64,000 bases of DNA, taken from the IMG/VR virus record IMGVR_UViG_3300024239_000013, positions 124,001-188,000 of that record; one strand, 5' to 3'. Under the pieces are notes generated by a model. That model saw only the letters and a program-made list of their open reading frames with translations, was not told where the DNA came from and searched no databases. A program made the translations under genes and the position numbers. Shown here piece after piece: positions 4,614 through 62,452 of the stretch (positions are counted from its first letter, which is position 1; every line of letters begins with the position of its first letter).

Positions 4614-5870
4614 TTAGATGAATCTAAGTGCTCTTGAAACCTTAATTAATTTCTTAGTTAACTCGTCAATATCTTCTCCTCTGGTTGTAATGTTAACAAG
4701 TTCTTGTAGATCCTCATTTTCTCCGATTATTCCCTTTAATCTAACAGAACCATTTTTTAAAAGATATTTTATTAATAGTGCTTTAGCATTTTTATGAATA
4801 GCTGATCCTTCCTGACCTGGATCTATGAAAACGCTTGCAGATAAGGTCTCTGCAGCTTCGGTGAAATAATCACTCAGTAATCTGTTCAATTCATTAATGG
4901 TTTCGATTTTTTCCTGTGCATTACTTCTGATGCTATATGTAGGCGTTATTAAATGTTCCTTTTCATATCTGCCTTTAGCTCTCTTGAAAGTTCTTTTAAA
5001 TATTGCGATAAAAACTGAACCAAATATTTCGTTATCTTGAATATTACATTTAACCGAATTGTCACCCGTTCTAAAATTAACACTATTTAAAGGCATCCTA
5101 TTAGAATTATTAACCCTCCATACCTCATAGCTTGAGCCATACATCGTTCCAGCTAAAGAACTTTGGCTAACTCCTACTATCCGTGCTACTAATTCCCCGT
5201 ATAATTCCCCAACTCTCTTCGTTGCTCTTGAATAGAACCTATATTTTGGAGATATCTGATCAACTTTATTTATTATAGTTCTATCGTTTTTATCACCCTT
5301 ACCAACAATTCCCATGTCATCCAGATTTTGTATAGTCGGTAATGCTACAACTGCATTAACATCTAAATCTGATAGCTCATGTCCTCCTATAACTTCTTTC
5401 ATTCTAGAAAGAATCTCTGGCATATCCATTTTGGATCCAATAGGAACAAGCTCTTCGAAATTTAATTTAGGTATATCTTTCTTTGGTATGATAGCTGCTG
5501 GTATATTATTTCTTATAATTCTTAATAGAAGAGCTCTTAAACATTCCTCTGGTGTATTGAACTTAGAAAGGTTATATCTTTCAACCCCCAATTTAGACGA
5601 AAGGTACTCATAGCAATATTCACCCTCTTCGTTTTTAAATATAGCAACCTTTGCCATAGGACCGGTTCTTCTTTCTAGAACTACCTCTCTATATCTTATT
5701 TCATAAACATCAACTCCGATGGATTTTAAGTCTCCTCCTTCTATGCTATTTCTGAATGAGTCATACATTTCCTTAGTACTATCATTAAGAGAATACCATT
5801 TTCTACCTTCGTCGAGTTCAAATTCAGAAGAATTAGATTCGAATGTTTTATAACCAAGTATTTTTTCCAT
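4614..5870 (-). CDS. Hypothetical protein, probable late/virion-internal
   Basis: 418 aa; N-terminal KILGYKTFES; TATATA motif upstream. Confidence 0.55.
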   Translation of the reverse strand: MEKILGYKTFESNSSEFELDEGRKWYSLNDSTKEMYDSFRNSIEGGDLKSIGVDVYEIRYREVVLERRTGPMAKVAIFKNEEGEYCYEYLSSKLGVERYNLSKFNTPEECLRALLLRIIRNNIPAAIIPKKDIPKLNFEELVPIGSKMDMPEILSRMKEVIGGHELSDLDVNAVVALPTIQNLDDMGIVGKGDKNDRTIINKVDQISPKYRFYSRATKRVGELYGELVARIVGVSQSSLAGTMYGSSYEVWRVNNSNRMPLNSVNFRTGDNSVKCNIQDNEIFGSVFIAIFKRTFKRAKGRYEKEHLITPTYSIRSNAQEKIETINELNRLLSDYFTEAAETLSASVFIDPGQEGSAIHKNAKALLIKYLLKNGSVRLKGIIGENEDLQELVNITTRGEDIDELTKKLIKVSRALRFI

Positions 5871-5882
5871 ATAACTATATAT

Positions 5883-7439
5883 TTAAATTCTTTTATCAAA
5901 CTGTTCAATTATCCAGTCTCTATTAGCTACTATATTTTCCATATCGATAATGTCCCTTTCCTTAACCCCAAGTGAATCTAGATCATCCAAATTTAGTATA
6001 TCCTCCATAGCTTGAATCCCGTCTAGTGAGGTTTCTTTAATTTTTTCCATCTCCTCTTTTGTATACTCCTTTCCTACAAGAGCATCAAAAACATTAAATG
6101 TTGCTTCTGTATAAATTCCAAATTCTGTGAACATTTTCATAAAAGTTGATTTAGATAAACCTTTATCCTTAGCTATAATTTCGGCTACAATACCAGAAAC
6201 TTGTTTCCAATCTTCCTCTGACATTACTCCAGATAGGAAACCTTTGTTCATCGAAATTAATGAATGTATAATTTTTGACGGTGTAAGACTTTCCCCTTCT
6301 CTGTAATAATATTCCAATGCTAATTTAATGTCACACTCCTTTTCAAATTTATTTTGTACCTCAGATATCAAATCTTCAGGATATCCAAGTCCTCTTAGAG
6401 CATCTATATAATTTCTGAAATAGTTACCATTTTTATCCCTAAGTCTATTGTTTGGTCTATTTGCATCGGTATGTATAGTTCCGTCTGGGTTTACTGTCAT
6501 TCCAATTAAGCTTAAATCGTTCGTTATTGGTAATTTTTTGTTAAGAATGTTAATCTGTACTCTTCCTTTACCGTAAGACCAAAATGTTGAATCTGTTCTA
6601 ATACACCAGTTTGTATCTGCACATACTGCTCTCTGAGCCTCTGGTGTTCTAGCTGACATCGCAATATATCCACCTTTTGAATATAATATCCCTGCTTTTG
6701 GACCAAGTTCTTTTAGACTTTTAAGTAAACCATTTTCATCTTGACCCCAAGTTTTTATGTGATCTAAAGCATCTTGGATAAGGTCTTTTAATGCAACTTT
6801 CTCGTCGCTATATTGAGGATATAATTCGACATGATCGTACTTCTTCATAGTTTTGGAGAAAGTCTTCCATGCGTTTTTAACAGTACCCTCGTCGTCTACT
6901 ACATCTTTCAATCCTTTTAACTGATTTGAAATGGTAGTTAATTCATCAAGTTCTTCTTTGGATGCTCTATTAAATGCTTTTTTCATTCTAGGAGTTAGCT
7001 CATTGTAAAACTCCTTAAGTTTTCTTCTTCTTTCTATATTTCTTAATTCGTCACCCAAACGTTCATATCCTGGTCTATGATCTTCATCATCAGGAACTAC
7101 CTTGGTAAAATCTCCTACTGGCATACTAAGCTCTGAAAGCTGTCCTTTGAATCTAGTAAGGTATGTTAATATTTCTTCTAGTTCCTCCATATGAGCTTTT
7201 TGTTCTATGTAAAATACTAAGAAAGGGAAGACATACCCAGGTTGTTTACTAAGAAGATTCTTAATTTCAATAAATTTACGATCCATTAAAATTTCTTTCT
7301 TTTCTTCATCACTCAATTCTGATGGTTTAACTTTCTTCTTCTCTGCATATTTTTTAATTAAATAATCTTTTGCAGCTTGAATATTCTCCATCAAAGGGGC
7401 AACTTCAAAAAACCCATGGAAACTTTTAATTTTATTCAT
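5883..7439 (-). CDS. Hypothetical protein, probable late/virion-internal
   Basis: 518 aa; N-terminal KIKSFHGFFE; internal TNWCI motif. Confidence 0.55.
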   Translation of the reverse strand: MNKIKSFHGFFEVAPLMENIQAAKDYLIKKYAEKKKVKPSELSDEEKKEILMDRKFIEIKNLLSKQPGYVFPFLVFYIEQKAHMEELEEILTYLTRFKGQLSELSMPVGDFTKVVPDDEDHRPGYERLGDELRNIERRRKLKEFYNELTPRMKKAFNRASKEELDELTTISNQLKGLKDVVDDEGTVKNAWKTFSKTMKKYDHVELYPQYSDEKVALKDLIQDALDHIKTWGQDENGLLKSLKELGPKAGILYSKGGYIAMSARTPEAQRAVCADTNWCIRTDSTFWSYGKGRVQINILNKKLPITNDLSLIGMTVNPDGTIHTDANRPNNRLRDKNGNYFRNYIDALRGLGYPEDLISEVQNKFEKECDIKLALEYYYREGESLTPSKIIHSLISMNKGFLSGVMSEEDWKQVSGIVAEIIAKDKGLSKSTFMKMFTEFGIYTEATFNVFDALVGKEYTKEEMEKIKETSLDGIQAMEDILNLDDLDSLGVKERDIIDMENIVANRDWIIEQFDKRI

Positions 7440-7459
7440 ATCTATAATATTTTAATTTA

Positions 7460-7469
7460 GATATATATC
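7460..7469. promoter_or_regulatory. Palindromic GATATATATC, candidate bidirectional late promoter
   Basis: Lies in the 50-bp gap between divergent genes; the RRTATATA motif recurs before many genes. Confidence 0.55.
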
Positions 7470-9246: not shown

Positions 9247-10803
9247 CTATGAATTCTTTAAACTTTCTTTTAGACGATTTCTAACATCCTCTAGAGTTGT
9301 TCTATTTTTAAATTCACCATTTAGATATATTGTTTTTAGTTCACCTTGATTTTCTCTTTCCCAATCACAGTGATCGTATAATTCATATTTACCATCAACG
9401 TCATTTTTAAATACTGATAATAAACCGGTTGCAGATTTTTTAATACCATCATCTGTAATAGGATCTTTGAAGATTTCTCTTGCTTCTCCATTTACTTCTA
9501 CGTAGGTTGCTTTCATTGCGAAACCGAAAGTATCACGTGTATTGTACTGATATGTAAATGAACCAATTCCTAAAACAACGTTGGTTGATGCGAATCCTTT
9601 TTCTGCTAATCTTCTACAAATTTCTTCTGCTCTTTCTAATGTAATAGAATCTCCATAAATTGCACCGATATGAGGATCTAAAACCTTATATCCCTGCTCG
9701 TTCACCTCCCCGCCGAAAACATCCCATAAAAGTTCAATAACACCCTTAAATTCAGGTCTATCCCATTCGTCAACATCATCGTAATACTTAAATGCTTCTA
9801 GCGCTTTTGGATTGGTATTAAGTCCGCATAAGATATCTACTGGATCCCCACTATCAGGTCTAATTACCAATTTACCATCTCTGGATAGAATTTCATCCTT
9901 TAATTCTTTGACATGACTAGTACAAACTTTCCACAAATCCCATGTATCCGATACCACAGATAGAATCCCAGTAGGATATGTCTTAATGAGTCTTCTAAAA
10001 GTTTCTAGTTCGTCTTCCTTTCCTCCTGCGCACATTACAGAATGTTCAGTTGCATTTACACTTCCACAAACCATTCCTTCTGCATGATAGTATTTACGAG
10101 CTCCGTAAATAGTTGGTAAGCTATCAGATCCCAAGAAAGAAGTAAGGTGAGAAACACCGGAAGAGATTACAGCCTCTACCGAGTCCATCCCTCTCATAGA
10201 GAAATCGTGACCTTGCCAATCAACGAACCAAGATTTTTCGGCATCTGTTTTTTCTTGCCATTTTGTAAGAATCTTTCTGTATTGGTGTGCGATGGTTGCT
10301 GAAGTCATCGGTTTCCATAAAAGATTTGATAATATAGTTTCTAGATAATTGGTAACCCAATAGAACTTAGGGTGTGTGTTGTATATGGTTAAAACCGGAA
10401 CCCTAATAGGAACTAAGCTACCTTCATCTATAGCTTTAACGTGGATTGGAAGATATCCAAGATCCCATAATTCCTGGAAGTGCGTTACATCGTAATCAGA
10501 TCCCAGATACATTGAAAGTTCTTTTTTCATTTCTTCAACAACTGGAACTAGATAAGTTGGATCGTTTTTTCTTTTAACTAACATAAGATCTCTTTCTAGA
10601 CCGTGTTGGAAAAATTCTTTTTCAAAAGCTTCGTGTATTTGCATCATCGTCATCTGCTCTCCAAAGCTAACGACTGCGTCACAACCAGAAGGTGCATATT
10701 TATTACTTCTTGGAGTGAAATTAGAGTAAACTAGTTCTGTTCCTTCTGGGTATTGTTGATGGTGTCCTGTTTTATAACCATCTGTTAAAAGTAGTGGATT
10801 CAT
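9247..10803 (-). CDS. Nicotinamide phosphoribosyltransferase-like protein (Nampt/NadV; probable Namat)
   Basis: LTDGYK.GH..QYP, HDFSMRG, ATEHSVM, VIRPDSGDP and IYGDSIT. Confidence 0.92.
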   Translation of the reverse strand: MNPLLLTDGYKTGHHQQYPEGTELVYSNFTPRSNKYAPSGCDAVVSFGEQMTMMQIHEAFEKEFFQHGLERDLMLVKRKNDPTYLVPVVEEMKKELSMYLGSDYDVTHFQELWDLGYLPIHVKAIDEGSLVPIRVPVLTIYNTHPKFYWVTNYLETILSNLLWKPMTSATIAHQYRKILTKWQEKTDAEKSWFVDWQGHDFSMRGMDSVEAVISSGVSHLTSFLGSDSLPTIYGARKYYHAEGMVCGSVNATEHSVMCAGGKEDELETFRRLIKTYPTGILSVVSDTWDLWKVCTSHVKELKDEILSRDGKLVIRPDSGDPVDILCGLNTNPKALEAFKYYDDVDEWDRPEFKGVIELLWDVFGGEVNEQGYKVLDPHIGAIYGDSITLERAEEICRRLAEKGFASTNVVLGIGSFTYQYNTRDTFGFAMKATYVEVNGEAREIFKDPITDDGIKKSATGLLSVFKNDVDGKYELYDHCDWERENQGELKTIYLNGEFKNRTTLEDVRNRLKESLKNS

Positions 10804-14734: not shown

Positions 14735-15550
14735 TTATGCAGATTTTGTTCTCTTTGGAGCGTTTTTAGTTCTAGCAGTTGGGTTCTCGTTATCTAGCGT
14801 ATCTATTGAAACCTGATATGTTGGTTTGAAGTCCCTTCCTGTTATCTCGTACCATCTGGTATGATTGTCTCTCTTAGCTAGCCAGTGATCATTTTCAACT
14901 TTATACTTATAAGGGTCGCCAGGTCTAACTATGATATTGGATTGTATTGACTCATCCTCTTTTGACTGTACTTTTTTAACAATTGGATCCTCCTTTTTTG
15001 ATGTGTTAGCTAAATCTTCAAGTCCTCCAGTTAAAGTTTTATCTATAGCTGAACCAATTTGAGAATATATTGGAAGATTAATATGTGGATCTGCTACATC
15101 TCCTATTGGTGGTTCTAGCACATTAACACCCTCAGCTCTAAATATATCATAATATTTCTTAACAGTTATCGGAGTTACTTTTTTATTTCCTCCCCATCCC
15201 CAAGATCCTTGTACAGCAAAAAGATTAGCTTTAGGAAAGGCCCTTTTTATTTCCTTAACCAAACCTTTTATATCGTCCTTAAAATTAAACCCCCCATTAG
15301 TTCCAATATTAATAACAACATTTCTAACATTTTCATTAACCTGATATTTAGCAACAGCTTCTTTTAAATGTTTAACATTCATTCCACTTTTCCATAAAGA
15401 TCTCTCGGATGAAGCGTTACCTATTACATCTAATGATTTTGAATTTTTTAGAATTATTGGGGTTGTTGAATCCCCGATAATAATATTAATGTCTGCATCA
15501 CTTTCATATAATTTTATAAAAGTTGAAAAGTTATGTATCTTATTTTCCAT
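14735..15550 (-). CDS. SGNH/GDSL-like hydrolase-fold protein, probable late/virion
   Basis: IIGDS, NIGTNG and DPH(I); CTS-like N-terminus. Confidence 0.5.
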   Translation of the reverse strand: MENKIHNFSTFIKLYESDADINIIIGDSTTPIILKNSKSLDVIGNASSERSLWKSGMNVKHLKEAVAKYQVNENVRNVVINIGTNGGFNFKDDIKGLVKEIKRAFPKANLFAVQGSWGWGGNKKVTPITVKKYYDIFRAEGVNVLEPPIGDVADPHINLPIYSQIGSAIDKTLTGGLEDLANTSKKEDPIVKKVQSKEDESIQSNIIVRPGDPYKYKVENDHWLAKRDNHTRWYEITGRDFKPTYQVSIDTLDNENPTARTKNAPKRTKSA

Positions 15551-15680
15551 GTTATATATACCTCAGATTAAACGTTTAATTGTAAACTATTGGCCAATGT
15601 TTCAGTCTTCCGTATCTTGGTTTTGTTGCATTATATATCATGGTTATCTCAGACTTGGTAATGTTCACATATATGACTTT

Positions 15681-28214: not shown

Positions 28215-28685
28215 TTATTCGTCTTCTTCGCCTTTCTCACCCTCTTCTTCACCTTCTTCATCATCCACTTCTTCATCTTCTTCATCATCCACTTCTTCAT
28301 CTTCATCTTCGTCTTCTATCTCAACTTGGATATTTTCTGGACCCTCGATAAATTCAGGCGAATCTATTTCTACTTTTTCTATATCATCAGATTCTTCTGG
28401 TTCTAATTCATTCATTAACCAATCTGAAACTTCCTGAACATCATCTTTAGATGTTGCTAAGTGATCTAATGCCCACCCATGCCCATCTTTAATCAACTCA
28501 TCAACTTTAGATGGGTCTAATTTAAGAATATTTTCTATGCTACGTTTAATTGAAGCTAGATTTTGGAAAAGCATATAATTCTCCTTTTTCTTTCCACCTT
28601 CAGGGGCTAGAACTTCTTCTGCTTCCTCGTTAAAACCAGAAGCCATTTTTTTAAACTCCTCAAAAGAAGCTATCTTGTTATCCAT
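28215..28685 (-). CDS. Acidic-tailed late protein (possible scaffold/internal protein)
   Basis: KIASFEEF N-terminus; repeated EEVDDEE in a D/E-rich tail; two GATATATA motifs upstream. Confidence 0.65.
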   Translation of the reverse strand: MDNKIASFEEFKKMASGFNEEAEEVLAPEGGKKKENYMLFQNLASIKRSIENILKLDPSKVDELIKDGHGWALDHLATSKDDVQEVSDWLMNELEPEESDDIEKVEIDSPEFIEGPENIQVEIEDEDEDEEVDDEEDEEVDDEEGEEEGEKGEEDE

Positions 28686-28726
28686 ATTATATTTTTTTTA
28701 AGTTATATATCTATTTATATATCAGA

Positions 28727-31048: not shown

Positions 31049-31052
31049 TTTT

Positions 31053-46090: not shown

Positions 46091-46159
46091 AAAATAATTA
46101 GAAATTTAATATTTATAGAAAAAATTGAAAAAAAGTTCCAAAAAAAATATTAAAAAAAA

Positions 46160-46474
46160 CTAATACTGGAATCTTTGGACTTGGTCTATACCATTTTGGA
46201 CTATTTCTGGTCCAGGTGCCATTATAACTGAAAGTCCATCAGAAAGCTCATATAGATCTTTTAAATATTCCTCTATTGAACTAATTTTATTCTTATCGAT
46301 ATTAAGTTTAATCAAAATATCATTCACAATATTTTTCAATTCAGTATTGAAGTTTTCGGTATCGTGAAAATTAAAATACTTTTCATATTTTTTAACTAAA
46401 TCAATAATCTCTGATTTTTCAACATCAGTTAAATTATCTGCGGAATATGATTCAAATTCTAATATTTTTTTCAT
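46160..46474 (-). CDS. Hypothetical late protein
   Basis: MKKILEFESY N-terminus. Confidence 0.6.
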   Translation of the reverse strand: MKKILEFESYSADNLTDVEKSEIIDLVKKYEKYFNFHDTENFNTELKNIVNDILIKLNIDKNKISSIEEYLKDLYELSDGLSVIMAPGPEIVQNGIDQVQRFQY

Positions 46475-46513
46475 AAGATATATATTTCAATAACTTTTAA
46501 ATTTTTTTAATGT

Positions 46514-46858
46514 ATGAAAAACATTTACGAGAATGATGAATTAGGACATTCTGAAAATCAATTAATTGACGACGGTGCTAGAGAAGAAGGTTCTGCATCT
46601 TGGGACGGAGAAGAAGAATCTATAGAGGATTTTAGCTCCGAAGAAGGTATTGATAATAATCAATTAGAAGAAACCCCAGATTCCGATAATCTTCCAGATC
46701 AAGAAGAAGAAAATGCTGATGTTTCCTTTGTAGAAGATGAGGATGTGGATGAGGATGATTACGAGGACTCAGACGAAGAAGAAAGTAAAAATACCCTACC
46801 GGATAATTCCAGAAGGGTACTTAGCTATTCAGATTATATTTCTTCTCTTAATCAGTAG
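46514..46858 (+). CDS. Highly acidic late protein
   Basis: D/E-rich; C-terminal RVLSYSDY; GATATATA upstream. Confidence 0.65.
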   Translation: MKNIYENDELGHSENQLIDDGAREEGSASWDGEEESIEDFSSEEGIDNNQLEETPDSDNLPDQEEENADVSFVEDEDVDEDDYEDSDEEESKNTLPDNSRRVLSYSDYISSLNQ

Positions 46859-47120
46859 TAGTTTTACCTAGATTTTTTCTAATCAATTTTCTTACATAGT
46901 GAGAAACAGAAACTGGTGCTTCACCTTTAGCAAGAGCCTCTTTAGAGATTTTTCTACCTAAGTCGGTTAAATCTTCCTTAGATAGAAGCACCTGTATTTT
47001 TTCAGTTTTTTCAGATTGTTCAGACTCTGATATAGGATTCTCTTGATCTTCAAAAGAATCAGATCCTATAACTTGGTTGAATGTTTTTAAGTTGTCCATA
47101 TTTTTTATATTATTTTTCAA
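46848..47120 (-). CDS. Ribbon-helix-helix-like protein
   Basis: KIQVLLS...SVSHYVRKLI. Confidence 0.5.
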   Translation of the reverse strand: MKNNIKNMDNLKTFNQVIGSDSFEDQENPISESEQSEKTEKIQVLLSKEDLTDLGRKISKEALAKGEAPVSVSHYVRKLIRKNLGKTTTD

Positions 47121-48567
47121 ATTCTATTCCTGCATGAGGTTCACCTTTAGCTTTAGCTACCTGGTATTTATTTGTTGGCTCCTCACTTATAACAAAAGCT
47201 TTATGTGGATTAACTATTAAACCTGCTTTTCTCATAAAAGCTCTGTTTGCTAAGAATGGTGTACTTTTATCTGTTCTGTCATTCGGAGAAACCCTAACTT
47301 TGGGTATGGTTACACCATCTATAGTAACATTCAATTCTATCATTGGCCTTGTGTGAATGTGTTTACCTACTTCTGCATCAGAATAACCAACTATATCATT
47401 TACAAATTTTTTATCCCCAACCCTCCATATCAGTTTATTTCCTTTTTCTTCTACCTCGTCTGCATGAATAGTGCAAGATTTTGCACCATTACCAGTATCA
47501 AATTTAGCTACCATCTTACCAATTCCAGGAAGACTTATACTTTCTAGGTATCCTATTTCTAGAGATGAATAAGCCCAATTTTCTTTGTCTAAGATATAAT
47601 CTAATACATCATCAACTATCGGTTTACCTATTGCTTTAGATATACCTTCAGTTCCTGGAGAAGAGTTGACTTCTAGAATATATGGTTTTTTGGTTTTTTC
47701 GTCAATCATTATATCAACCCCACACCAGTGACATCCAACTGCGTTAGCTGCTTTACAAGCTATATCAACTAGTTCTTCTGGAATTTCAAAATTAGAAACC
47801 TTTCCACCTAAAGAATAGTTTGTTCTGAAGTCTTTTTCCACCGCTTCTCTTTTCATAGAACCTAGTATTATGCAATTGTCATCAGATTGTTTAAGCGGGT
47901 CAAATTTCTTAACTATAACTTGTATTCTAAGATCAGATTTTGAATTGATTTTTTCTTGTATTAATATCTCGTTAGTTTCGTCCAGTTTTCTGATTGTTTG
48001 ATAAACTGATTTTAGAGATGCGTAAGAATCAACTATAGAAACTCCAATTCCTTGTGTTCCTGAAAGAAGTTTCATAATGATAGGGAATTTTCCTCCTACT
48101 GCTTCTAGTGCCTTATCTAGATAATCCTCATTAGGGACTAATGAATATTTAGGAACAGGTAGACCATTTTCTTCCATTATCTGAGAAGTTATAAATTTAT
48201 TTTCACAAACTTCCATGGATTCTAACGTATTTACAGTGAAGTATCTAGCTTCTTCTAGAGAAAGCAAGATCTGTTTAGTGTGAGAATTTTCTAAAACTCC
48301 TCTTCTTGGAACTATTACTGTTGAATTAGGTTCTATTAGAATCTGCTCTTCTTCAGTTTTTATGAGGTGTCCATTATAAACCTTTTCTAATGTTGCATCA
48401 TTAACATCTACAATGTGACATTCTACTCCTCTTTTTTTACACTCTTCCATAAAAGAGGCAGACGTTTTACTCCCCTTAACATTTCCTGTTAATACTATAA
48501 CCTTGGTAGTTTCAGATTTAGCTTCGTTTAAAAAGGAGAAAAAATTAAGTATCTTCTTATTTGACAT
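47110..48567 (-). CDS. RimK-like ATP-grasp ligase fused to a retropepsin-like (RimK-associated) protease domain
   Basis: G.QG.GV, FRTN.SLGG, GVD, LEVNSSPG; AKFDTG. Confidence 0.88.
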   Translation of the reverse strand: MSNKKILNFFSFLNEAKSETTKVIVLTGNVKGSKTSASFMEECKKRGVECHIVDVNDATLEKVYNGHLIKTEEEQILIEPNSTVIVPRRGVLENSHTKQILLSLEEARYFTVNTLESMEVCENKFITSQIMEENGLPVPKYSLVPNEDYLDKALEAVGGKFPIIMKLLSGTQGIGVSIVDSYASLKSVYQTIRKLDETNEILIQEKINSKSDLRIQVIVKKFDPLKQSDDNCIILGSMKREAVEKDFRTNYSLGGKVSNFEIPEELVDIACKAANAVGCHWCGVDIMIDEKTKKPYILEVNSSPGTEGISKAIGKPIVDDVLDYILDKENWAYSSLEIGYLESISLPGIGKMVAKFDTGNGAKSCTIHADEVEEKGNKLIWRVGDKKFVNDIVGYSDAEVGKHIHTRPMIELNVTIDGVTIPKVRVSPNDRTDKSTPFLANRAFMRKAGLIVNPHKAFVISEEPTNKYQVAKAKGEPHAGIEFEK

Positions 48568-48633
48568 CAAATTTCTTATTATTTTATCAGTGTATATATC
48601 AATATCGCTTTAAGTGTTTGTGTGAAATTAATA

Positions 48634-52830: not shown

Positions 52831-54237
52831 TTAAATTTCATCTTCTTCTGAATTTTCCTCAACAATTTCATCTTCCTCAACAACTTGGAAAATCTCTATT
52901 CCATCGGATTGGGTCGGCTCAAATAATGCAGTGTTTGTAAATTTGGTATTTTTCCCCTTAGGCATTTTTTGGATTTCCTTCATTTTGCTCTTATAGAGTC
53001 TTTCTTGTTCTTTTATTTCCTTCTTAACTTTAGCAATTTTTTTCTTTAACTCTTGTATATCAATTTGAGTTTGCTTAATGTGCTCTATGCTAAGTTTTAC
53101 TGCTTCTATTCTTTGAAGTCTAGAGGATATCCACGATTCATATTCTCCTAAGAATTCTAAGATCTCGTCATTTTTCCTTTTCTTAGCAACCATAAAATTT
53201 AAAAATTTCAATTTAGCCTCTAAGAAAGCAAGTTCTCTCGAATAGTCTAATTCGTCTCTAATTAGTCTTTTTAGCTTGACATATTCTAAATGACCTCTAA
53301 AATGATCTAGATACTCCTTGACAGAACTGAATTCCATAACATTCCCATCCTTTACAAAAATAACGTCTTCCTTTACTATTATTTTTGATAATTTAGAAAT
53401 TATATTACACATATCTCTAAATGCATCAGGACTCGATATTCCTCTAAGAGAAACTAGCAAATCACACTTACTCTGTGATCTATTTTCTATTCTGTAATCA
53501 TGACCGCTTCTCTCTAGCTTATCTTCTAACTTATTAATAAAACTATCGTATCTCATAACAGGAGGAAGATCAAAAATTCGAATTATTTTTTTATTTTGAT
53601 CTATTTCCATACCACTTTCTATTAACCAGGTATTTTCCTCGTTCATGTATTTAGTGATTTTTCCTGAAAAGTCCTTAAAATATGGTTTTAATAACTTTGG
53701 AGTTCCTTTTAAATATTCCACTACATCTTCATATTTCCTAGGAAGTATATTACTTCTATATCCAACTGCTATACCAACAACATGTGTCAGAAGTCCAAGT
53801 GGAAATTCTACATGAATCCAATCGTGACCACCCTCACTATTTTTTTCATTAAGATCGTAATTTTTAGATATAATCTCTTTGATTTTTTGGTTAATCTTAA
53901 CAGACGTATATCTAGGTGCTGAAGGACTCGGATTAACCGGGGATCCAAAAAATCCATCACCTTCTAATATACCATACGAACACCCAAAAGGTCTGGCAAG
54001 TTTAGATATTGCTCCAGCTAGAGAGGAATCTCCATGGTGATATAACCCTGTTTTTATAACCTCACCAACCAAACCAACTGTTTTATTAAATTTACTTGGA
54101 GAATTTTCTAATATTAATCTTTGAACCGGGGTTAAAGCATCATAAAAATTTGGAATTCCCCTACTTTGTAAAACGTACAGAGCATATGTTCTGTATTGCG
54201 TGTTTATCTGATCTGATATGTTTAATTGATTATTCAT
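52831..54237 (-). CDS. Type IIA topoisomerase, DNA-breakage subunit (gp52-like)
   Basis: RGIP..D.L.PVQR, YHHGD.S, G.FG, APRYT and GIAVG. Confidence 0.9.
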   Translation of the reverse strand: MNNQLNISDQINTQYRTYALYVLQSRGIPNFYDALTPVQRLILENSPSKFNKTVGLVGEVIKTGLYHHGDSSLAGAISKLARPFGCSYGILEGDGFFGSPVNPSPSAPRYTSVKINQKIKEIISKNYDLNEKNSEGGHDWIHVEFPLGLLTHVVGIAVGYRSNILPRKYEDVVEYLKGTPKLLKPYFKDFSGKITKYMNEENTWLIESGMEIDQNKKIIRIFDLPPVMRYDSFINKLEDKLERSGHDYRIENRSQSKCDLLVSLRGISSPDAFRDMCNIISKLSKIIVKEDVIFVKDGNVMEFSSVKEYLDHFRGHLEYVKLKRLIRDELDYSRELAFLEAKLKFLNFMVAKKRKNDEILEFLGEYESWISSRLQRIEAVKLSIEHIKQTQIDIQELKKKIAKVKKEIKEQERLYKSKMKEIQKMPKGKNTKFTNTALFEPTQSDGIEIFQVVEEDEIVEENSEEDEI

Positions 54238-57171: not shown

Positions 57172-58959
57172 TTATTTCCCAGAACTTAACCATTTCTTTC
57201 TCTCATTAGCAGACTTACCAAAAGCCATCTCTAGATGTTTTTTAGTTTCATTGTCCTCCTTAAGAACTGTTATTTTTTTATTTTTCATAACATAATCCCA
57301 GTCCTCAAGAGAAAGAGAACCAAGTCCTTTAAGGTATCTAACGTTTGATTTTTCACCCTTCCCTGAATTCTTTTTAAAATCTTCTAATGAATAATAATAT
57401 TTTTTAACCCTGTCCCCTACTGTAACCAATGGGGTTTCTAGAAAATGGATTCTTCCTTGTTTAATCATCCAAGGAAACCACATATAAAAAAGATTTATTA
57501 ATAGCGATGTAATGTGTGCACCGTCTGGGTCTTGATCAGTTGCTATAACGACTCTCTCAAAAGGACAAGCTAGATTCTGCCCTTCAGGGTCTAGATTTAA
57601 AATCTGCATAAGCTCTAAGATCTCTCTGTTTTCCGATAGATCGGAAAGACTTCTTGCATTTTTAATTTTTCCCTTTAAAGCATATACACCATCTTTCTTG
57701 GGGTCTCTTTTTTGTAAAATAGATCCCATTGCACTTAGACCCTCTACTATAAATAGATTCTCAGCTTTTGTCGAAGTTGCAGGGAAGTATTTATTAGAAT
57801 GCTTGATTCTGATAGATTTCTTCTCCCTTCTAATTTTTTTAAGCTCCGTGTCCTTTCTCCTATCATCTACTGATTTTTTTATTCTTTTAAATACGTCGCT
57901 CTTGAAAAATTTATTTAATGCAGAATCAAAGTTCCTCACTATTGTAGGCTCTACTTCCTCCCTCTTAGAAACGAATTTAGTCTTATTTTGGTCACCAAAT
58001 CTAACTATCTTAGGTGAGAGATTCAGAATGATTAAAGTGTCGTAAAAGTGGTGTCCTAGCGTGTCATCTAGCTGAATGTTTATCCTGTCTTGAATTATTT
58101 TTTGGTGGATTCCTGTACAAAGAGCACTATTCACAAAAGAGAAAGTTCCAGAATCTGGTTTTTTTTCCCAGATGAGAATTTCACCTATTGATGTTTTACT
58201 AGACCAATCTGGCTTTAGTTCAGATGATATATTTTCAGTCTTTCCGTCCCAAGTAAATTCAATCTTTAAAGAAGCTGTTTTTTCCTCAGTTTCTAAAACT
58301 CTTTTTTTCAAACAGAGATATGATTTAATTGTTGAATAATCCCATTTGGTATTATCAAAAACACTTGAATTTGGTATGAATGTAACGGTAGTACCTGTTT
58401 GTTTTGATTTTGGTTTATTTGTAATAATCGGTTTTTCTGAAATGAATTTATTCCATGACTGTCTATAAATTTCTTTTGAATTAATGGTCTCGATTTGGAA
58501 GAATACTGAAAGTGCATTAACTAGGCTCACCCCCATTCCATTAGTACCTACTATAGATTCACTTATATTATCGTTATCGAAATTCGAACCAGCTCTTAGC
58601 ATAGATACTGCAGTTTCTATGTTACTCAATTTACTTTTTTTGTTTATGGCTGATCCATTAGTAAACCCATCTCCAGTATCAGTTATGCTTATTGAATTAT
58701 GTTTAGAGTCAACTATAACAGAGATCTTTTTCATCGGAGTGGACATTCTCTTTGCTTCATCAACTGAATTAGCAAATACCTCATCAAATAATTTATACAT
58801 TCCTATTGAATGTTCTCTTAAAACAGATTTAATAAAGCCGTCTCCGATTATAGGTAACGTTTCTTCTGATCTTTTTACTGAACCAACATACATGGTTGGT
58901 CTTTTTATAATGTGTTCAAAATCCGTAAGTACTTCAATGGTCTTATTAACTTTACTCAT
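57172..58959 (-). CDS. Type IIA topoisomerase, ATPase/TOPRIM subunit (fused gp39+gp60-like)
   Basis: RP.MY.GS, E...NS.DE, GTNG.G, EGLSA, LKGK, D.D.DG.HI and YLKGLG. Confidence 0.93.
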   Translation of the reverse strand: MSKVNKTIEVLTDFEHIIKRPTMYVGSVKRSEETLPIIGDGFIKSVLREHSIGMYKLFDEVFANSVDEAKRMSTPMKKISVIVDSKHNSISITDTGDGFTNGSAINKKSKLSNIETAVSMLRAGSNFDNDNISESIVGTNGMGVSLVNALSVFFQIETINSKEIYRQSWNKFISEKPIITNKPKSKQTGTTVTFIPNSSVFDNTKWDYSTIKSYLCLKKRVLETEEKTASLKIEFTWDGKTENISSELKPDWSSKTSIGEILIWEKKPDSGTFSFVNSALCTGIHQKIIQDRINIQLDDTLGHHFYDTLIILNLSPKIVRFGDQNKTKFVSKREEVEPTIVRNFDSALNKFFKSDVFKRIKKSVDDRRKDTELKKIRREKKSIRIKHSNKYFPATSTKAENLFIVEGLSAMGSILQKRDPKKDGVYALKGKIKNARSLSDLSENREILELMQILNLDPEGQNLACPFERVVIATDQDPDGAHITSLLINLFYMWFPWMIKQGRIHFLETPLVTVGDRVKKYYYSLEDFKKNSGKGEKSNVRYLKGLGSLSLEDWDYVMKNKKITVLKEDNETKKHLEMAFGKSANERKKWLSSGK

Positions 58960-59306: not shown

Positions 59307-59855
59307 TTAGTTTTTCGGGGTAAAATAGATCTCGAAAATTTGTTTAGGCTCAATGTAAGTCATATAATATTCTTCCATTTCTTTACTAGATTCAGCTTTT
59401 TTCTTATGAGAAACAGGTATACACATCACATAATCAACTCCGGTTTTATTGATTATTCCCTTAACTATAAATTCAGAATCTACGAAAATATTAATTTCGT
59501 CAGTGTATTCCTCGTCTTCTGGTCTGTCAGCTCTTTCTATTCTGCTTCCATAAATAGCATTTTTTCTAGCGGCCATTCTTTTTCTTTCCTTAGCAACTTC
59601 GTCTGCAACATAAGCTGGAGTTCTTTTTCCTTGAGAAGGTATATCAGCCATAACTGTAATGGTTTCGATTTTTCCATTTTCTTGGTCATCTATAAATTTA
59701 TCGATAACCGATATGATCTCAGGAACTTTTATCACCATAGCTGGTTTCATTCCAGGGTTTTTTACAAATTCAGGCTCATTATAAACTGGTATTCCCGCCT
59801 TTATTTCAAACTCATTAACCGGTGAATAGCTTTCAAATTCTAAAAGATGTTTCAT
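59307..59855 (-). CDS. Hypothetical late protein
   Basis: MKHLLEFESY; GGATATATA upstream. Confidence 0.65.
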   Translation of the reverse strand: MKHLLEFESYSPVNEFEIKAGIPVYNEPEFVKNPGMKPAMVIKVPEIISVIDKFIDDQENGKIETITVMADIPSQGKRTPAYVADEVAKERKRMAARKNAIYGSRIERADRPEDEEYTDEINIFVDSEFIVKGIINKTGVDYVMCIPVSHKKKAESSKEMEEYYMTYIEPKQIFEIYFTPKN

Positions 59856-59902
59856 TATTTAAAATATATTTTTTTTACTATATATCCAAATTAAGGATAT
59901 TT

Positions 59903-61147
59903 TTATTTAGATTGTAATGCTCTCATTCTACGTGCTTTTTCTTGAGCACCCTTTTGATAAAATGCGAGATTTGCTCTTAGTCTATTTTGTTCCTCTTTAG
60001 ATATATCTTTAAAAAAGGGAGCATTTATTATTGCATTAGTTTTTTCAACGGCTATTTCTGGATTTCCTATATAATATGCTGCTAAAGAGTATTCATCTAG
60101 TAATCTCCATTGCCATATCTCAGGTTCTATAAATAGAATATCTGATGTTCCTTTAGTTTTTATTGCTAAGTCACCATAGGCAAATGCAATTAAATATCTT
60201 TTTTGATCCCTTAGTTTTCTCATAACATGGAAAACAGATTCCAATCTAGTTGGTCTATATTCCCATGCTTTAGAATATAAATTAGTTACAGTTTCGTCAT
60301 CCACCCCCATTTTTTCACTAATCTTAGCTATCATGTAAAGAGAATAGTAAACTTCCTCTTCCCATTCGCCCATTTGGACTCTCTTTTTATAAGCTTCTAT
60401 TGATTTTTCTAACTGATTTGAATCTCTATAACTTTGAGCAAGATAGAACATATACCTAGAATTATCTGGCTCTTTAATTAATGCTTCTTCCAATATCTTT
60501 GCATCATTAGCATATTTTTCTTCTAATGAAGATGCTCTTTTTAGTGGTGATATATCAGCTAAAACATAGCAATTTTTTACTTGCCCTTGAAGTGGATTTG
60601 CAGATTCTTCATCTAAAAACAGATATTCGTGTAATACACCTTTATAAATCCAGTTCTGATCTGATTTAACTATTTGTGCTCTATAATATTGAAGTCCACT
60701 AAGTTTATATGAGATTTGATAACAGTCTGGTTTATTGTCCAATCCTGCAAAAGGATTTACCCCCGGTTCTGTATAAAATGTATCGTCGGCATCGATTATC
60801 CATCTATAATCACATTTACCTTTTGCTAAATTCAAGCTCTCTGTTCTATTAACTTCAAAATTAACCCAAGGTCTTTCATACAATTCCCCAGGTATATTGA
60901 GTTCTTTCATGGTCTCATTGATGACATCTATTGTCTTATCTGTAGATCCAGTATCTACTATTACCCAATACTTTATAAAGGGAGCTACTGCAGTCAAACA
61001 TCTTTTTATCGTGTCTTCTTCATCTTTAACGATCATAACCAAACATAAACTGATTGTTTGATCTTTGGAATTTGATAAAGGTTTAATGATTGGACTGGTC
61101 ATCTTAACTGAATTAAATCTCTTATTAGATTTTTTATTTTTGCTCAT
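59903..61147 (-). CDS. GT2 glycosyltransferase with TPR repeats
   Basis: LVMIVKDE, VDTGSTD, IDADD, GVLHE; TPR-like FYLAQSYRD. Confidence 0.88.
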   Translation of the reverse strand: MSKNKKSNKRFNSVKMTSPIIKPLSNSKDQTISLCLVMIVKDEEDTIKRCLTAVAPFIKYWVIVDTGSTDKTIDVINETMKELNIPGELYERPWVNFEVNRTESLNLAKGKCDYRWIIDADDTFYTEPGVNPFAGLDNKPDCYQISYKLSGLQYYRAQIVKSDQNWIYKGVLHEYLFLDEESANPLQGQVKNCYVLADISPLKRASSLEEKYANDAKILEEALIKEPDNSRYMFYLAQSYRDSNQLEKSIEAYKKRVQMGEWEEEVYYSLYMIAKISEKMGVDDETVTNLYSKAWEYRPTRLESVFHVMRKLRDQKRYLIAFAYGDLAIKTKGTSDILFIEPEIWQWRLLDEYSLAAYYIGNPEIAVEKTNAIINAPFFKDISKEEQNRLRANLAFYQKGAQEKARRMRALQSK

Positions 61148-61165
61148 TTTAATTTGATTTAGATA

Positions 61166-61819
61166 TTATAGCGTATCTTTTTGTTTTTTTCCTCTTTTTC
61201 TTGAAATATTTATTTTCTCAACCTCTCCTATTGGACCTAAATTTAGAGTAATGTTATATTTTTCATCAAGATCCTCCTTTATTTTTTGTTTATTTCTATT
61301 CAAGTTCTTTATAGGGAAATCGTGGACTGATATATTGAAATTGTCAAATAACCAAAATTTAAGATGATAATATTTTTTATCGAATATCGAATATTCCAAT
61401 TTTTTATTTTTAGCTCTCATTTTAGTCTCAAATAAATGCTTACTTTTAAAATAAAATTCTATAAAAAACCAGTTATTTGACTTACCAGAGATCTTTAAAT
61501 TTTTACCAAAATCTAATAGGTACAGAACTCTTTTATGATCAAGTTCCATTTTATAATATTTTAGACTGTTTATATTTAATATAGAATCTATCGAATCTGG
61601 TATATTTTCAGATTCACAATATAAGTTTAGAAAACAGGTTATTTCGTTAGTTTCGAAATTTTTAATAGATCTTACATCTATATCATTTGAACCTTTTAAT
61701 ATAGATATAAAATATTCCAGAGATTCATTTAATAGATTTCTCTGGAATATTTCTTTTTCTTTATTCTCACTAAGAGTTTCCTTTAAGGATTTAACGAAAT
61801 CCCTAGTGGCTTTTTTCAT
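61166..61819 (-). CDS. Hypothetical protein
   Basis: 217 aa ORF. Confidence 0.55.
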   Translation of the reverse strand: MKKATRDFVKSLKETLSENKEKEIFQRNLLNESLEYFISILKGSNDIDVRSIKNFETNEITCFLNLYCESENIPDSIDSILNINSLKYYKMELDHKRVLYLLDFGKNLKISGKSNNWFFIEFYFKSKHLFETKMRAKNKKLEYSIFDKKYYHLKFWLFDNFNISVHDFPIKNLNRNKQKIKEDLDEKYNITLNLGPIGEVEKINISRKRGKKQKDTL

Positions 61820-61831
61820 CCGTAAAGGTGT

Positions 61832-62452
61832 TTATTTATTAAAACCTAATTTTTTTGACACTGATTTTAAAACTCCTTCTCTTCCTGAAGTTGCATCTAT
61901 TTTTACTAGCTTTCTACTTCTTTCGTAAAAATCGATAAGAGGGAAGGTTTTTTCGTGATATTCGTCAAATCTTTTATCGATAATTTTATCGCTAGTATCA
62001 TCTTTCCTATTTTCTTTCTTAGCTCTTTCCTTGATTCTTTCTTTAGCTACATCCTCGGGTAGATCTAGAAATAGTGCATGATTTAATCCTAGACCCATTT
62101 TACCTAACATCGAATCAAGTCTCTTCGCTTGTTTAATTGTTCTTGGAAACCCATCAAATATAATACCCTTCTCGATATCAATATTTTTAAGCTCCTTTCT
62201 TAAAATTTTAATCATCATATCATCAGGTAAAAAATTACCTGCCTCAATTATCTTTTTAAGCTCAGGGTCATCAGATTTTCTTATCAGGTCTCCAGTTGAT
62301 ATGTGATTTATTCCATATTTGTCCATCAATTGTTTGGACAAAGTTCCCTTTCCTGATCCAGGAGCACCCAAGATAACAAGGATTTTTCCTTGTTTATCTG
62401 GGAGTTCCCTTTCATTTAAGAATCCACTAAAACTCTTAATTATATTTTCCAT
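61832..62452 (-). CDS. adk: Adenylate kinase with CTS-like N-terminal extension
   Basis: GAPGSGKGT, HISTGDLIR, DGFPRT..QA and R.DD. Confidence 0.92.
   Translation of the reverse strand: MENIIKSFSGFLNERELPDKQGKILVILGAPGSGKGTLSKQLMDKYGINHISTGDLIRKSDDPELKKIIEAGNFLPDDMMIKILRKELKNIDIEKGIIFDGFPRTIKQAKRLDSMLGKMGLGLNHALFLDLPEDVAKERIKERAKKENRKDDTSDKIIDKRFDEYHEKTFPLIDFYERSRKLVKIDATSGREGVLKSVSKKLGFNK

What the first reader, a model, noticed from the sequence alone, without database searches (positions are those of the whole stretch)
4614..62452. Shared CTS-like N-terminal tag suggests enzymes are packaged into the capsid
Seen: unrelated proteins begin with a K/N-[IL]-x-x-[FY]-x-x-[FY]...E pattern: 5870 (KILGYKTFES), 7439 (KIKSFHGFFE), 15550 (KIHNFSTFIKLYES), 28685 (KIASFEEF), 46474 (KILEFESY), 48567 (KILNFFSFLNE), 59855 (HLLEFESY) and 62452 (IIKSFSGFLNE). 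Each has a TATATA element upstream. Similar motifs occur at the C-terminus of 4341..4598 (LIHFDDF) and 46514..46858 (VLSYSDY). Established: T4 internal proteins use the capsid targeting sequence MKTYQEFIAE, cleaved after E. Inference: adenylate kinase, the RimK-protease fusion and the SGNH-like protein may be packaged and injected.
Basis: partly seen in the sequence, partly recalled or inferred. Interest (0 to 1): 0.68.

Follow-up and report, generated by a model that had tools for sequence, protein, structure and literature searches.

The report
Shared capsid-targeting-like leader on phage proteins
About one in ten proteins of this 319-kb uncultured giant phage, including an adenylate kinase and a glutamate ligase, starts with the same short leader, which resembles the tag phage T4 uses to load proteins into its head; this predicts, without proving, a large set of proteins delivered into the host with the DNA.

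Summary
All eight N-termini and their upstream ATATATA elements are at the stated coordinates. Genome-wide (319,334 bp, 440 ORFs), 42 proteins from 31 unrelated families start with M-x(1-4)-[KRNH]-[ILV]-x-x-[FY]-x-x-[FY]. About 2 are expected, and none of 82,788 interior positions scores as high.

The phage has a T4-type capsid protein (gp23) and prohead protease (gp21/S77). The tag core [FY]xx[FY][ILV]xE also occurs in:
- T4's own ipII and ipIII leaders and the gp23 maturation site;
- 14 tandem 14-residue repeats of this phage's protease-scaffold fusion.

Further support:
- Orthologues down to about 50-60% identity keep the tag.
- Cellular adenylate kinases lack it.
- It goes with a phage-specific GATATATA promoter that also precedes tail and head genes, never with host-type promoter boxes.
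- A hydrophobic-x-Glu site follows it in 82% of tags.

The same leader is enriched in the 735-kb LR756501 genome (57 ORFs against 4.4 expected).

Best reading (confidence 0.6): a T4-type capsid-targeting propeptide, greatly expanded. Packaging and cleavage are untested. The C-terminal motifs are at chance level. "SGNH-like" is unverified.

The parts
4614..5870 (-). Tagged protein of 418 aa with no family match. Tag lies in codons 1-16 (about 5823-5870). The first hydrophobic-x-Glu site ends at residue 21.
   Evidence: no Pfam, PHROG or NCBIfam match
5875..5883 (-). AATATATAG element, 12 nt before the ATG of 4614-5870
5883..7439 (-). Tagged protein of 518 aa with no family match. Orthologues keep SFxxF, then a hydrophobic-x-Glu site (L-M-E or variants) followed by N.
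7461..7469 (-). GATATATAT element, 29 nt before the ATG of 5883-7439
   Evidence: also present before most orthologues
14735..15550 (-). L-Y-E ends at residue 16.
15552..15560 (-). TATATATAA element, 9 nt before the ATG
28215..28685 (-). Tagged protein of 156 aa with no family match. F-N-E ends at residue 20.
28703..28723 (-). Two GATATATAA elements, 25 and 37 nt before the ATG
46160..46474 (-). Tagged protein of 104 aa with no family match. No hydrophobic-x-Glu site near the tag (the first ends at residue 69).
46478..46486 (-). AATATATAT element, 11 nt before the ATG
47110..48567 (-). Tagged RimK-family alpha-L-glutamate ligase of 485 aa. The ATP-grasp domain starts at about residue 22-34, just after the tag; L-N-E ends at residue 15. 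The C-terminal 160 aa resemble PF05618 only weakly.
   Evidence: tag and promoter are kept in 23 of 25 distinct orthologue N-termini
48592..48600 (-). GATATATAC element, 32 nt before the ATG
59307..59855 (-). Tagged protein of 182 aa with no family match. V-N-E ends at residue 15.
59878..59886 (-). GATATATAG element, 30 nt before the ATG
61832..62452 (-). Tagged adenylate kinase of 206 aa. Residues 1-22 are an extension that solved cellular adenylate kinases lack. L-N-E ends at residue 14.
62460..62470 (-). Overlapping ATATATA elements, 15-17 nt before the ATG, in the 19-nt gap behind the ribonucleotide reductase gene (62472-63959)

Best explanation
The shared N-terminus is a T4-type capsid-targeting propeptide, much expanded in this lineage.

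Proposed mechanism:
1. Tagged proteins are made mainly from a phage-specific late-type promoter (GATATATA).
2. The leader, M-x(1-4)-[KRN]-[ILV]-x-x-[FY]-x-x-[FY]-[ILV]-x-E, takes them into the scaffolding core of the prohead.
3. There the gp21-type protease removes the leader after a Glu in a hydrophobic-x-Glu site, as it does for the capsid protein propeptide and the scaffold.
4. The mature proteins stay in the head and leave it with the DNA at infection.

Predicted cargo:
- an adenylate kinase;
- a RimK-type glutamate ligase;
- one CHAP and two SLT cell-wall hydrolases;
- 11 leucine-rich-repeat paralogues;
- about 25 proteins with no family match.

Shown here: the tag, its position specificity, its conservation, its promoter association, the T4-type head module, and the sequence core shared with T4 leaders and with this phage's scaffold repeats.

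Inferred, not shown: targeting, cleavage, packaging and ejection.
For: 1. Position-specific and far beyond chance: 39-42 N-termini against about 2 expected, and none in protein interiors. The tagged proteins fall into 31 unrelated families.

2. T4-type head module:
- gp23 capsid protein (PF07068, E 2.5e-41). It aligns end to end with T4 gp23 at tblastn E 1e-7.
- gp21-type S77 protease, matching the PHROG 'head maturation protease' at E 8e-39.
- The protease is fused to a scaffold-like C-terminal part. The PTm1 orthologue is annotated 'prohead core scaffolding protein and protease'.

3. The 7-residue core [FYW]xx[FYW][ILVM]xE:
- In this genome it occurs 21 times at N-termini (2.3 expected), 14 times in the protease's tandem 14-residue repeats (0.07 expected), and only 34 times elsewhere in 97,748 residues.
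- In the T4 record it hits the ipII and ipIII leaders, two further ORF N-termini, and residues 59-65 of gp23, which end at Glu65. That Glu65 is the known maturation cleavage site rests on my own knowledge.

4. A [ILVMF]-x-E site lies within 12 residues after the second aromatic in 28 of 34 non-redundant tags, against 25% at control positions. The predicted propeptides are 12-23 aa long, matching the 10-20 aa of T4 leaders (PMC5694885).

5. In this phage's capsid protein the last Glu before the conserved fold sits in S-L-N-E|S (residue 43). This is the same L-N-E|S/A as the tag consensus.

6. Selection acts on the protein:
- Synonymous codons and I/L/V and F/Y exchanges occur at the anchor positions.
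- Adenylate kinase orthologues at 60-86% identity keep K6, F8, F11, N13 and E14 invariant.
- RimK orthologues down to 51% identity keep the tag.
- Head-module orthologues keep it.

7. The tag is an add-on. The adenylate kinase core aligns from residue 23 to residue 2 of solved cellular enzymes. The RimK domain starts just after the tag.

8. Promoter class:
- [GA]ATATATA precedes 20 of 42 tagged genes against 46 of 398 untagged ones (p 9e-8).
- The same element precedes the tail sheath, tail fibre, head closure and prohead protease genes.
- The host-type Bacteroidota -7 box TAnnTTTG precedes 0 of 42 tagged genes against 44 of 398 untagged ones (p 0.014).

9. The cargo fits the model:
- Cell-wall hydrolases (CHAP, two SLT) are classic ejection proteins.
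- Replication enzymes and shell or tail proteins are untagged.
- The helical 382-aa protein next to the capsid gene carries the tag in 43 relatives.

10. The same leader is enriched in related giant phages:
- LR756501 (735 kb): 57 against 4.4 expected.
- G003 (246 kb): 24 against 1.5.
- T4 itself: 4 against 0.9.
Against: - There is no proteomic or biochemical evidence. The phage is known only from metagenomes.
- The adenylate kinase gene lies 19 nt behind the ribonucleotide reductase large-subunit gene, in a nucleotide-metabolism and topoisomerase neighbourhood. Four of five orthologous loci lack the ATATATA element. It may be made early and act in the cytoplasm.
- Half of the tagged genes have no ATATATA within 60 nt. 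Ten of these lie inside the tandem LRR array and are probably co-transcribed.
- The full 14-column PSSM does not recognise the T4 leaders; only the 7-residue core does, ranking them 1st and 6th of 270 ORFs.
- Six of 34 tags have no nearby hydrophobic-x-Glu site, including window gene 46160-46474.
- The helical hydrophobic moment of the tags barely differs from that of other N-termini (0.45 against 0.40, p 0.05).
- Two cultured phages that matched in the capsid-protein search, PTm1 and MaF61, show no enrichment. The tag is therefore not universal in the wider group.
- Forty-two different cargo proteins would exceed what has been shown by experiment for T4.
Confidence: 0.6

Rival explanations
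1. The leader is only a substrate site or pro-sequence for the phage protease. It is cut in the cytoplasm to switch the proteins on or off late in infection, and the proteins are never packaged.
For: - The shared core also marks the scaffold repeats and the T4 gp23 cleavage site, so it could be purely a cleavage determinant.
- The adenylate kinase sits in a nucleotide-metabolism gene cluster.
- The cell-wall hydrolases could be lysis enzymes that need timed activation.
Against: - By established knowledge of T4, the protease becomes active only inside the finished prohead (PMC9958956).
- The capsid protein's own candidate site (S-L-N-E) has no aromatic residues. The conserved aromatic and [KRN][ILV] part of the tag is therefore not needed for cutting and must do something else.
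- The short leader sits far from the catalytic domains, which start at residue 63 in the CHAP protein and about 161-170 in the SLT proteins. A 12-20 aa leader is unlikely to inhibit them.
Confidence: 0.12
2. The leader is an uncleaved interaction or localisation peptide for another shared partner. Candidates are a chaperone or unfoldase, the membrane, a replication or assembly factory, or the outside of the virion.
For: - The position-specific, conserved aromatic pattern suggests a docking peptide.
- Six tags have no nearby Glu site.
- Leucine-rich-repeat proteins could be surface or decoration proteins.
Against: - A hydrophobic-x-Glu site follows 82% of tags, against 25% at control positions.
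- The core matches T4 leaders that are known to be cut.
- The tag is too polar for a signal peptide or membrane anchor: mean hydrophobicity is -0.15 and charged residues are interspersed.
- Tagged proteins cluster in the head-assembly module beside the capsid and protease genes.
Confidence: 0.15
3. The shared N-terminus has no function of its own as a peptide. It is either a promoter-plus-leader DNA cassette spread by recombination, or a constraint on translation initiation in an AT-rich genome.
For: - The tag often comes with the ATATATA element.
- The genome is 31% G+C, and many N-termini start M-K or M-N.
Against: - Codons at the anchor positions vary (TTT/TTC, ATA/ATT/ATC, four Leu codons, GAA/GAG), with conservative I/L/V and F/Y exchanges.
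- Upstream sequences differ apart from the 8-mer.
- Adenylate kinase orthologues keep the tag but not the promoter element.
- An AT-rich initiation region would not give an i, i+3, i+6 aromatic pattern.
- PTm1 (30% G+C) shows no enrichment.
Confidence: 0.05

Closest known systems
Capsid targeting sequence (CTS) of phage T4 internal proteins IPII and IPIII (Mullaney and Black 1996, as cited in PMC5694885 and PMC9958956)
   Same: - A short N-terminal leader on otherwise unrelated proteins.
- A phage with a gp23 capsid protein and a gp21 protease.
- The core [FY]xx[F][IL]xE ending in Glu.
- A predicted propeptide of 12-23 aa, against 10-20 aa in T4.
- Enzymes among the cargo (T4 Alt).
   Different: - The leader here is 2-4 residues longer, with an added [KRN]-[ILV] position, and prefers N at P2.
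- It is carried by 42 or more proteins in 31 families (about 10% of ORFs), against a handful in T4.
- The full-length PSSM does not detect the T4 leaders.
- Function here is inferred only.
Long propeptides of head and ejection proteins in phiKZ-like giant phages (phiKZ, 201phi2-1, SPN3US; PMC5694885)
   Same: - Giant phages with many internal head proteins.
- A homologous prohead protease cutting after Glu.
- N-terminal similarity between paralogues, suggested to act in targeting.
   Different: - Those propeptides are mostly over 100 residues long.
- Their motif has a small residue at P3 (A/S/G-x-E).
- No single short consensus is shared by dozens of unrelated proteins.
- Here P3 is I/L/V/M/F.
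Cargo-loading peptides of encapsulins (own knowledge)
   Same: A short terminal peptide, shared by unrelated enzymes, directs them into an HK97-fold protein shell.
   Different: - Encapsulin peptides are usually C-terminal, bind the shell protein directly and are not removed.
- No protease, scaffold or DNA is involved.
- This is an analogy only, not a membership claim.
Ejection proteins of T7 (gp14-16) and P22 (gp7, gp16, gp20) (PMC8402733; T7 from own knowledge)
   Same: - Proteins carried in the head and sent into the cell ahead of or with the DNA.
- They include a lytic transglycosylase (T7 gp16), as in the two tagged SLT proteins here.
   Different: They are incorporated by specific assembly interactions, not by a shared cleavable leader.

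Membership tests
T4-type capsid targeting sequence (CTS) propeptide | Short leader at the extreme N-terminus of otherwise unrelated proteins | tested here: met
   42 N-termini against none in protein interiors; 31 unrelated families
T4-type capsid targeting sequence (CTS) propeptide | The phage encodes a gp23-type capsid protein and a gp21-type (S77) prohead protease | tested here: met
   PF07068 at E 2.5e-41, PF03420 at 33.8 bits, PHROG 207 at E 8e-39
T4-type capsid targeting sequence (CTS) propeptide | Sequence likeness to the T4 ipII and ipIII leader | tested here: inconclusive
   The 7-residue core is shared and ranks T4 leaders 1st and 6th of 270 T4 ORFs. The full 14-column PSSM does not score them. 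Leaders in LR756501 are one residue longer than the T4 leader.
T4-type capsid targeting sequence (CTS) propeptide | The leader ends in a hydrophobic-x-Glu protease site | tested here: met
   28 of 34 tags against 25% at control positions; 13 of 34 exactly at +3 against 6.5%
T4-type capsid targeting sequence (CTS) propeptide | The leader is actually removed by the prohead protease | not testable with these tools
   Needs N-terminomics or an in-vitro cleavage assay
T4-type capsid targeting sequence (CTS) propeptide | Tagged proteins are found in proheads and virions, and the tag suffices to load a foreign protein | not testable with these tools
   The phage is uncultured. The one complex prediction gave no verdict.
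T4-type capsid targeting sequence (CTS) propeptide | Expression at the time of head assembly | tested here: inconclusive
   Promoter-motif association only: 20 of 42 against 46 of 398, and no host-type boxes. Metatranscriptome contigs were uninformative.
phiKZ-type giant-phage propeptides | Cleavage motif with a small residue at P3 (A/S/G-x-E) and propeptides mostly over 100 aa | tested here: not met
   P3 is I/L/V/M/F and the predicted propeptides are 12-23 aa
Sec, Tat or lipoprotein signal peptide | An uninterrupted hydrophobic core after a basic N-region (plus a lipobox Cys for lipoproteins) | tested here: not met
   Mean hydrophobicity of residues 2-16 is -0.15. Charged and polar residues alternate with the aromatics, and there is no Cys.

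The most novel reading that the evidence does not exclude
The tag is a single copy of the scaffold's own 14-residue repeat, so cargo is loaded by mimicking the scaffold.
- Tagged proteins would co-assemble with the repeat helix of the protease-scaffold fusion and be released by the same cut that dismantles the scaffold.
- If so, a one-line sequence rule would read out the whole injected protein set of the largest known phages: about 40 proteins here, and 57 to about 200 candidates in the 735-kb genome.
- That set would include metabolic enzymes and arrays of fast-evolving leucine-rich-repeat effectors.
Probability: 0.3. Interest if true: 0.85.

Novelty: new variant of a known kind. Interest (0 to 1): 0.72.

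Why it matters
How proteins are selected for the scaffolding core of T4-type heads is still described as mysterious, and in T4 the leader is shared by only two or three proteins (PMC9958956). This lineage uses the same kind of leader on dozens of unrelated proteins. It also carries a matching repeat in its scaffold.

That has three consequences:
- It gives many natural examples from which to define the targeting rule.
- It gives a candidate binding partner to test.
- It gives a cheap way to predict the injected protein set of uncultured giant phages, including the 634-735 kb Mahaphage genomes, for which no virion data exist.

The predicted cargo points to early host takeover and cell-wall penetration functions that could be tested directly. 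It comprises cell-wall hydrolases, a glutamate ligase, an adenylate kinase and an array of 11 leucine-rich-repeat paralogues.

Tried and rejected
- Complex prediction: the scaffold-repeat region (residues 270-500 of the protease fusion) was tested against the full-length tagged adenylate kinase. Score 0.00, verdict 'no answer'. This is evidence neither for nor against binding.
- AlphaFold2 model of the 661-aa protease fusion: mean pLDDT 45, too poor to use. It draws the repeats as one long helix.
- HMM search of the T4 record with the 16-column tag alignment: nothing found, because the model is too short for the tool's first look. It was replaced by scripted scans.
- Megablast of window DNA against GenBank phages: no match.
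- Reads: near-identical DNA occurs in 11 studies. The RNA-library contigs are short and may be DNA carry-over, so they show neither transcript starts nor timing.
- Amphipathic-helix idea: the hydrophobic moment barely differs from other N-termini, so I make no such claim.
- C-terminal version of the tag: rejected as chance, 4 against 2 expected.
- Family scans (Pfam, PHROGs, NCBIfam) of the six window-tagged proteins without a family gave nothing.
- I did not run a fold search on the helical 382-aa model, because coiled-coil matches are uninformative.
- The papers searched do not mention such a leader in jumbo or huge phages. Only open-access texts were covered.
- Technical note: the minus-strand references omit the start codon. 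Residue numbers from those calls are one lower than the true ones.

Full report
**What the window is**

The 64-kb window is bases 124,001-188,000 of a single 319,334-bp IMG/VR virus record (31.4% G+C, CheckV completeness 100%). A simple ORF call gives 440 genes covering 92% of the genome, 381 of them on the minus strand.

The phage belongs to the T4 superfamily:
- It has a gp23-type major capsid protein (PF07068, E 2.5e-41). This protein aligns over its whole length with T4 gp23 (tblastn E 1e-7).
- It has a gp21-type S77 prohead protease (PHROG 'head maturation protease', E 8e-39).

Its closest phage records by capsid and protease are:
- the Lak phages;
- the uncultured genomes of 462 to 735 kb, LR745206 and LR756500-LR756504. 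Four of these lengths (634, 636, 642 and 735 kb) are those of the 'Mahaphage' genomes predicted to infect Bacteroidetes (PMC7162821).

More than 80 IMG/VR contigs carry capsid genes 72-91% identical to this one. Near-identical DNA occurs in subsurface, wastewater, freshwater and river metagenomes from 11 studies.

**The observation**

The pattern is not a window curiosity:
- [KRNH][ILV]xx[FY]xx[FY] lies in the first 16 residues of 39 of 440 proteins, against 1.5-2.1 expected.
- A PSSM built from these N-termini finds 42 at 12 bits or more, and none among 82,788 interior positions.
- The motif always begins at residue 2-5.
- With the first 25 residues removed, the 42 proteins fall into 31 BLASTP-unrelated families. 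These are an 11-member tandem array at genome 38,668-48,374, a pair, and 29 singletons that include all eight window genes.

**What the tagged proteins are**

Family matches:
- adenylate kinase (window 61832-62452);
- RimK-family alpha-L-glutamate ligase (window 47110-48567; TIGR00768 above its cut-off);
- a CHAP domain protein;
- two SLT lytic transglycosylases;
- the 11 tandem paralogues, which have leucine-rich repeats.

The RimK protein's C-terminal 160 residues resemble the RimK-associated 'Zn_protease' family only weakly. Most other tagged proteins match no family in Pfam, PHROGs or NCBIfam.

The tag is an add-on:
- The adenylate kinase core aligns from residue 23 onto residue 2 of solved cellular enzymes.
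- The RimK domain starts right after the tag.

None of the replication or nucleotide enzymes I examined is tagged (topoisomerase subunits, ribonucleotide reductase, NAMPT). Nor is any shell, portal, sheath or fibre protein.

**Link to head assembly**

Several tagged or near-tagged genes sit in the head module, and their orthologues keep the leader in dozens of related contigs.
- The 382-aa protein beside the capsid gene is tagged in 43 relatives. Its model is all-helical and scaffold-like (pLDDT 81).

The protease gene encodes 662 residues.
- The protease domain is residues about 18-233.
- Residues about 290-490 are 14 tandem copies of a 14-residue unit, with a 42-nt DNA period.
- Ten to fourteen copies are conserved in every relative examined. 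These include a 246-kb phage (G003) whose protease fusion is only 39% identical, and the 642-kb and 735-kb genomes.
- Each unit contains Y-x-x-Y-[LIV]-A-E, the same 7-residue core as the tag.

Genome-wide, [FYW]xx[FYW][ILVM]xE occurs:
- 21 times at N-termini (2.3 expected);
- 14 times in these repeats (0.07 expected);
- 34 times in the remaining 97,748 residues.

The protease fusion also has the highest density of hydrophobic-x-Glu sites among the long proteins: 36 sites, 5.4 per 100 residues, against 2.2 +/- 1.2. This fits a scaffold that the protease chops up.

**Link to T4**

I read the T4 record itself.
- The ipII and ipIII leaders (M-K-T-Y-Q-E-F-I-A-E) contain the same core. So do a 54-aa ORF and a 98-aa ORF.
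- The core also matches residues 59-65 of gp23, which end at Glu65. That Glu65 is the known maturation cleavage site rests on my own knowledge.
- The core therefore looks like an extended gp21-family substrate and targeting motif: aromatics at P7 and P4, an aliphatic residue at P3, and Glu at P1.
- The tag PSSM restricted to these columns ranks T4 leaders 1st and 6th of 270 ORFs. The full 14-column PSSM does not score them, because the leader here is a few residues longer.

In this phage:
- A [ILVMF]-x-E site follows the second aromatic within 12 residues in 28 of 34 non-redundant tags, against 25% at control positions. This predicts propeptides of 12-23 residues, the size range of T4 leaders (PMC5694885).
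- In the capsid protein the last Glu before the conserved fold is in S-L-N-E|S at residue 43. This matches the tag consensus [IL]-N-E|[SA].

**Selection and expression**

Selection acts on the peptide, not the DNA:
- Anchor positions use synonymous codons and I/L/V and F/Y exchanges.
- Adenylate kinase orthologues at 60-86% identity keep K6, F8, F11, N13 and E14.
- Twenty-three of 25 distinct RimK orthologue N-termini, down to 51% identity, keep both the tag and the GATATATA element. Two homologues, at 46% and 36% identity, keep neither.

Expression, as far as promoter motifs show:
- GATATATA is the most enriched upstream 8-mer: 38 of its 55 genomic copies lie within 60 nt of a start codon.
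- It precedes the prohead protease, tail sheath, tail fibre and head-closure genes, so I take it for the late promoter.
- It precedes 20 of 42 tagged genes against 46 of 398 untagged ones (p 9e-8).
- The Bacteroidota host-type -7 box TAnnTTTG precedes 0 of 42 tagged genes against 44 of 398 untagged ones (p 0.014).

**Breadth**

Core within the first 20 residues, observed against expected:

| Genome | Observed | Expected | Poisson p |
|---|---|---|---|
| This phage (319 kb) | 21 | 3.0 | 1e-11 |
| LR756501 (735 kb) | 57 | 4.4 | 1e-42 |
| G003 (246 kb, gp23-type) | 24 | 1.5 | 7e-21 |
| T4 | 4 | 0.9 | 0.012 |
| G001 (192 kb, gp23-type) | 4 | 1.5 | 0.065 |
| Tenacibaculum phage PTm1 | 2 | 1.5 | 0.45 |
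| Flavobacterium phage MaF61 | 0 | 0.4 | 1.0 |

- In LR756501 the leader is typically M-I-K-x-[FY]-x-x-[FY]-I-[NK]-E-[AS], one residue longer than T4's.
- Leucine-rich-repeat arrays in other gp23-type phages carry their own lineage-specific shared leaders.

**Interpretation**

The best-supported reading is a T4-type capsid-targeting propeptide, greatly expanded in this lineage (confidence 0.6). Tagged proteins would enter the scaffolding core, lose the leader to the prohead protease, and be ejected with the DNA.

Shown here:
- the tag;
- its conservation;
- the head module;
- the shared core;
- the promoter association.

Inferred:
- targeting;
- cleavage;
- packaging;
- ejection.

The main caveats are these:
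- There are no virion data.
- The adenylate kinase gene lies 19 nt behind the ribonucleotide reductase gene, and 4 of 5 orthologous loci lack the promoter element.
- Some tags have no Glu site.
- The number of predicted cargo proteins is unusually large.

Rivals:
- a protease pro-sequence without packaging (0.12);
- an uncleaved docking peptide for another partner (0.15);
- a non-functional promoter-leader cassette or translation constraint (0.05).

That the tag mimics one scaffold repeat and loads cargo by co-assembly is an attractive but untested extension. The single complex prediction gave no verdict.

**Novelty**

The kind of element is known from T4. New here:
- the consensus;
- the scale (about 10% of genes, 31 families, enzymes and an LRR array);
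- the matching scaffold repeats;
- the reach into the largest known phage genomes.

I found no mention of such a leader in the open-access literature on jumbo or huge phages.

Noticed in passing
Genome C1:276072-278060 (locus L015:72-2060, minus strand); outside the window: The prohead protease is fused to a C-terminal part holding 14 tandem 14-residue repeats (42-nt period). Each repeat has a Y-x-x-Y-[LIV]-A-E unit. The repeats are conserved in relatives up to the 735-kb LR756501 genome.
   Followed up: yes
Genome C1:38668-48374 (locus L005:2668-12374, plus strand): Eleven tandem leucine-rich-repeat paralogues of 231-315 aa all start with nearly the same leader. Similar arrays with their own shared leaders occur in other gp23-type phage contigs (G001, G003).
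   Followed up: partly
Genome C1:105279-119104 (just upstream of the window): A second family of about 11 small proteins (72-161 aa) shares a different N-terminal module, M-E-K-E-F-[IV]-P-Y..A-L-x-L-K-E-L-G-F or M-E-D-T..T-A-K-L-A-K-E-K-G-F. Function unknown.
   Followed up: no
Genome C1:294776-297163 (locus L016:776-3163, minus strand): A 795-aa acidic protein behind a GATATATA element has 43 hydrophobic-x-Glu sites (5.4 per 100 aa), matching the protease-scaffold fusion in density. It may be a second core or scaffold protein that the protease degrades.
   Followed up: no
Genome C1:289775-293036: Two adjacent ORFs of 555 and 529 aa have similar N-termini (M-A-G-F-[LV]-D) and a similar internal stretch (G-R-P-K-[VI]-Q-F-Y-K-N-Y-L). 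Only the 555-aa one was scanned, and it matches the portal PHROG (E 2e-62). They may be a duplicated portal gene.
   Followed up: no
Genome C1:272503-274239: A 578-aa ORF lies between the capsid gene and the tagged 382-aa gene. It is absent at this position in most related contigs, where the two genes are adjacent. It may be an inserted mobile gene.
   Followed up: no
window 46514-46858 (+): A 114-aa protein that is extremely rich in Asp and Glu, transcribed divergently from tagged gene 46160-46474. No family match. Its C-terminal motif is at chance level.
   Followed up: partly
window 9247-10803, 28727-33002, 52831-54237, 57172-58959, 59903-61147, 62472-63959: Window context: NAMPT-type phosphoribosyltransferase; two large glycosyltransferase proteins, one with an FkbM methyltransferase domain; type II topoisomerase A-like and B-like subunits; a family-2 glycosyltransferase; and the ribonucleotide reductase large subunit. 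Tagged genes are scattered among these.
   Followed up: partly
whole genome, upstream regions: The Bacteroidota-type -7 promoter box TAnnTTTG precedes 44 untagged genes and no tagged gene. This fits a Bacteroidota host and a separate early gene class.
   Followed up: partly
T4 record NC_000866: about 19130 (54-aa ORF) and about 20396 (98-aa ORF), minus strand: Two small T4 ORFs besides ipI-III start with leaders like the capsid targeting sequence (M-K-T-F-K-E-F-I-K-E and M-T-R-K-Y-V-K-W-I-A-E). I did not check whether they are known head proteins.
   Followed up: no
window 44000-49900: Near-identical DNA (half or more of the sampled words) is present in 16 runs from wastewater, river, freshwater and subsurface samples and two unnamed organisms; holders of any part span 11 studies. 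The phage is widespread, so a culture should be obtainable.
   Followed up: partly
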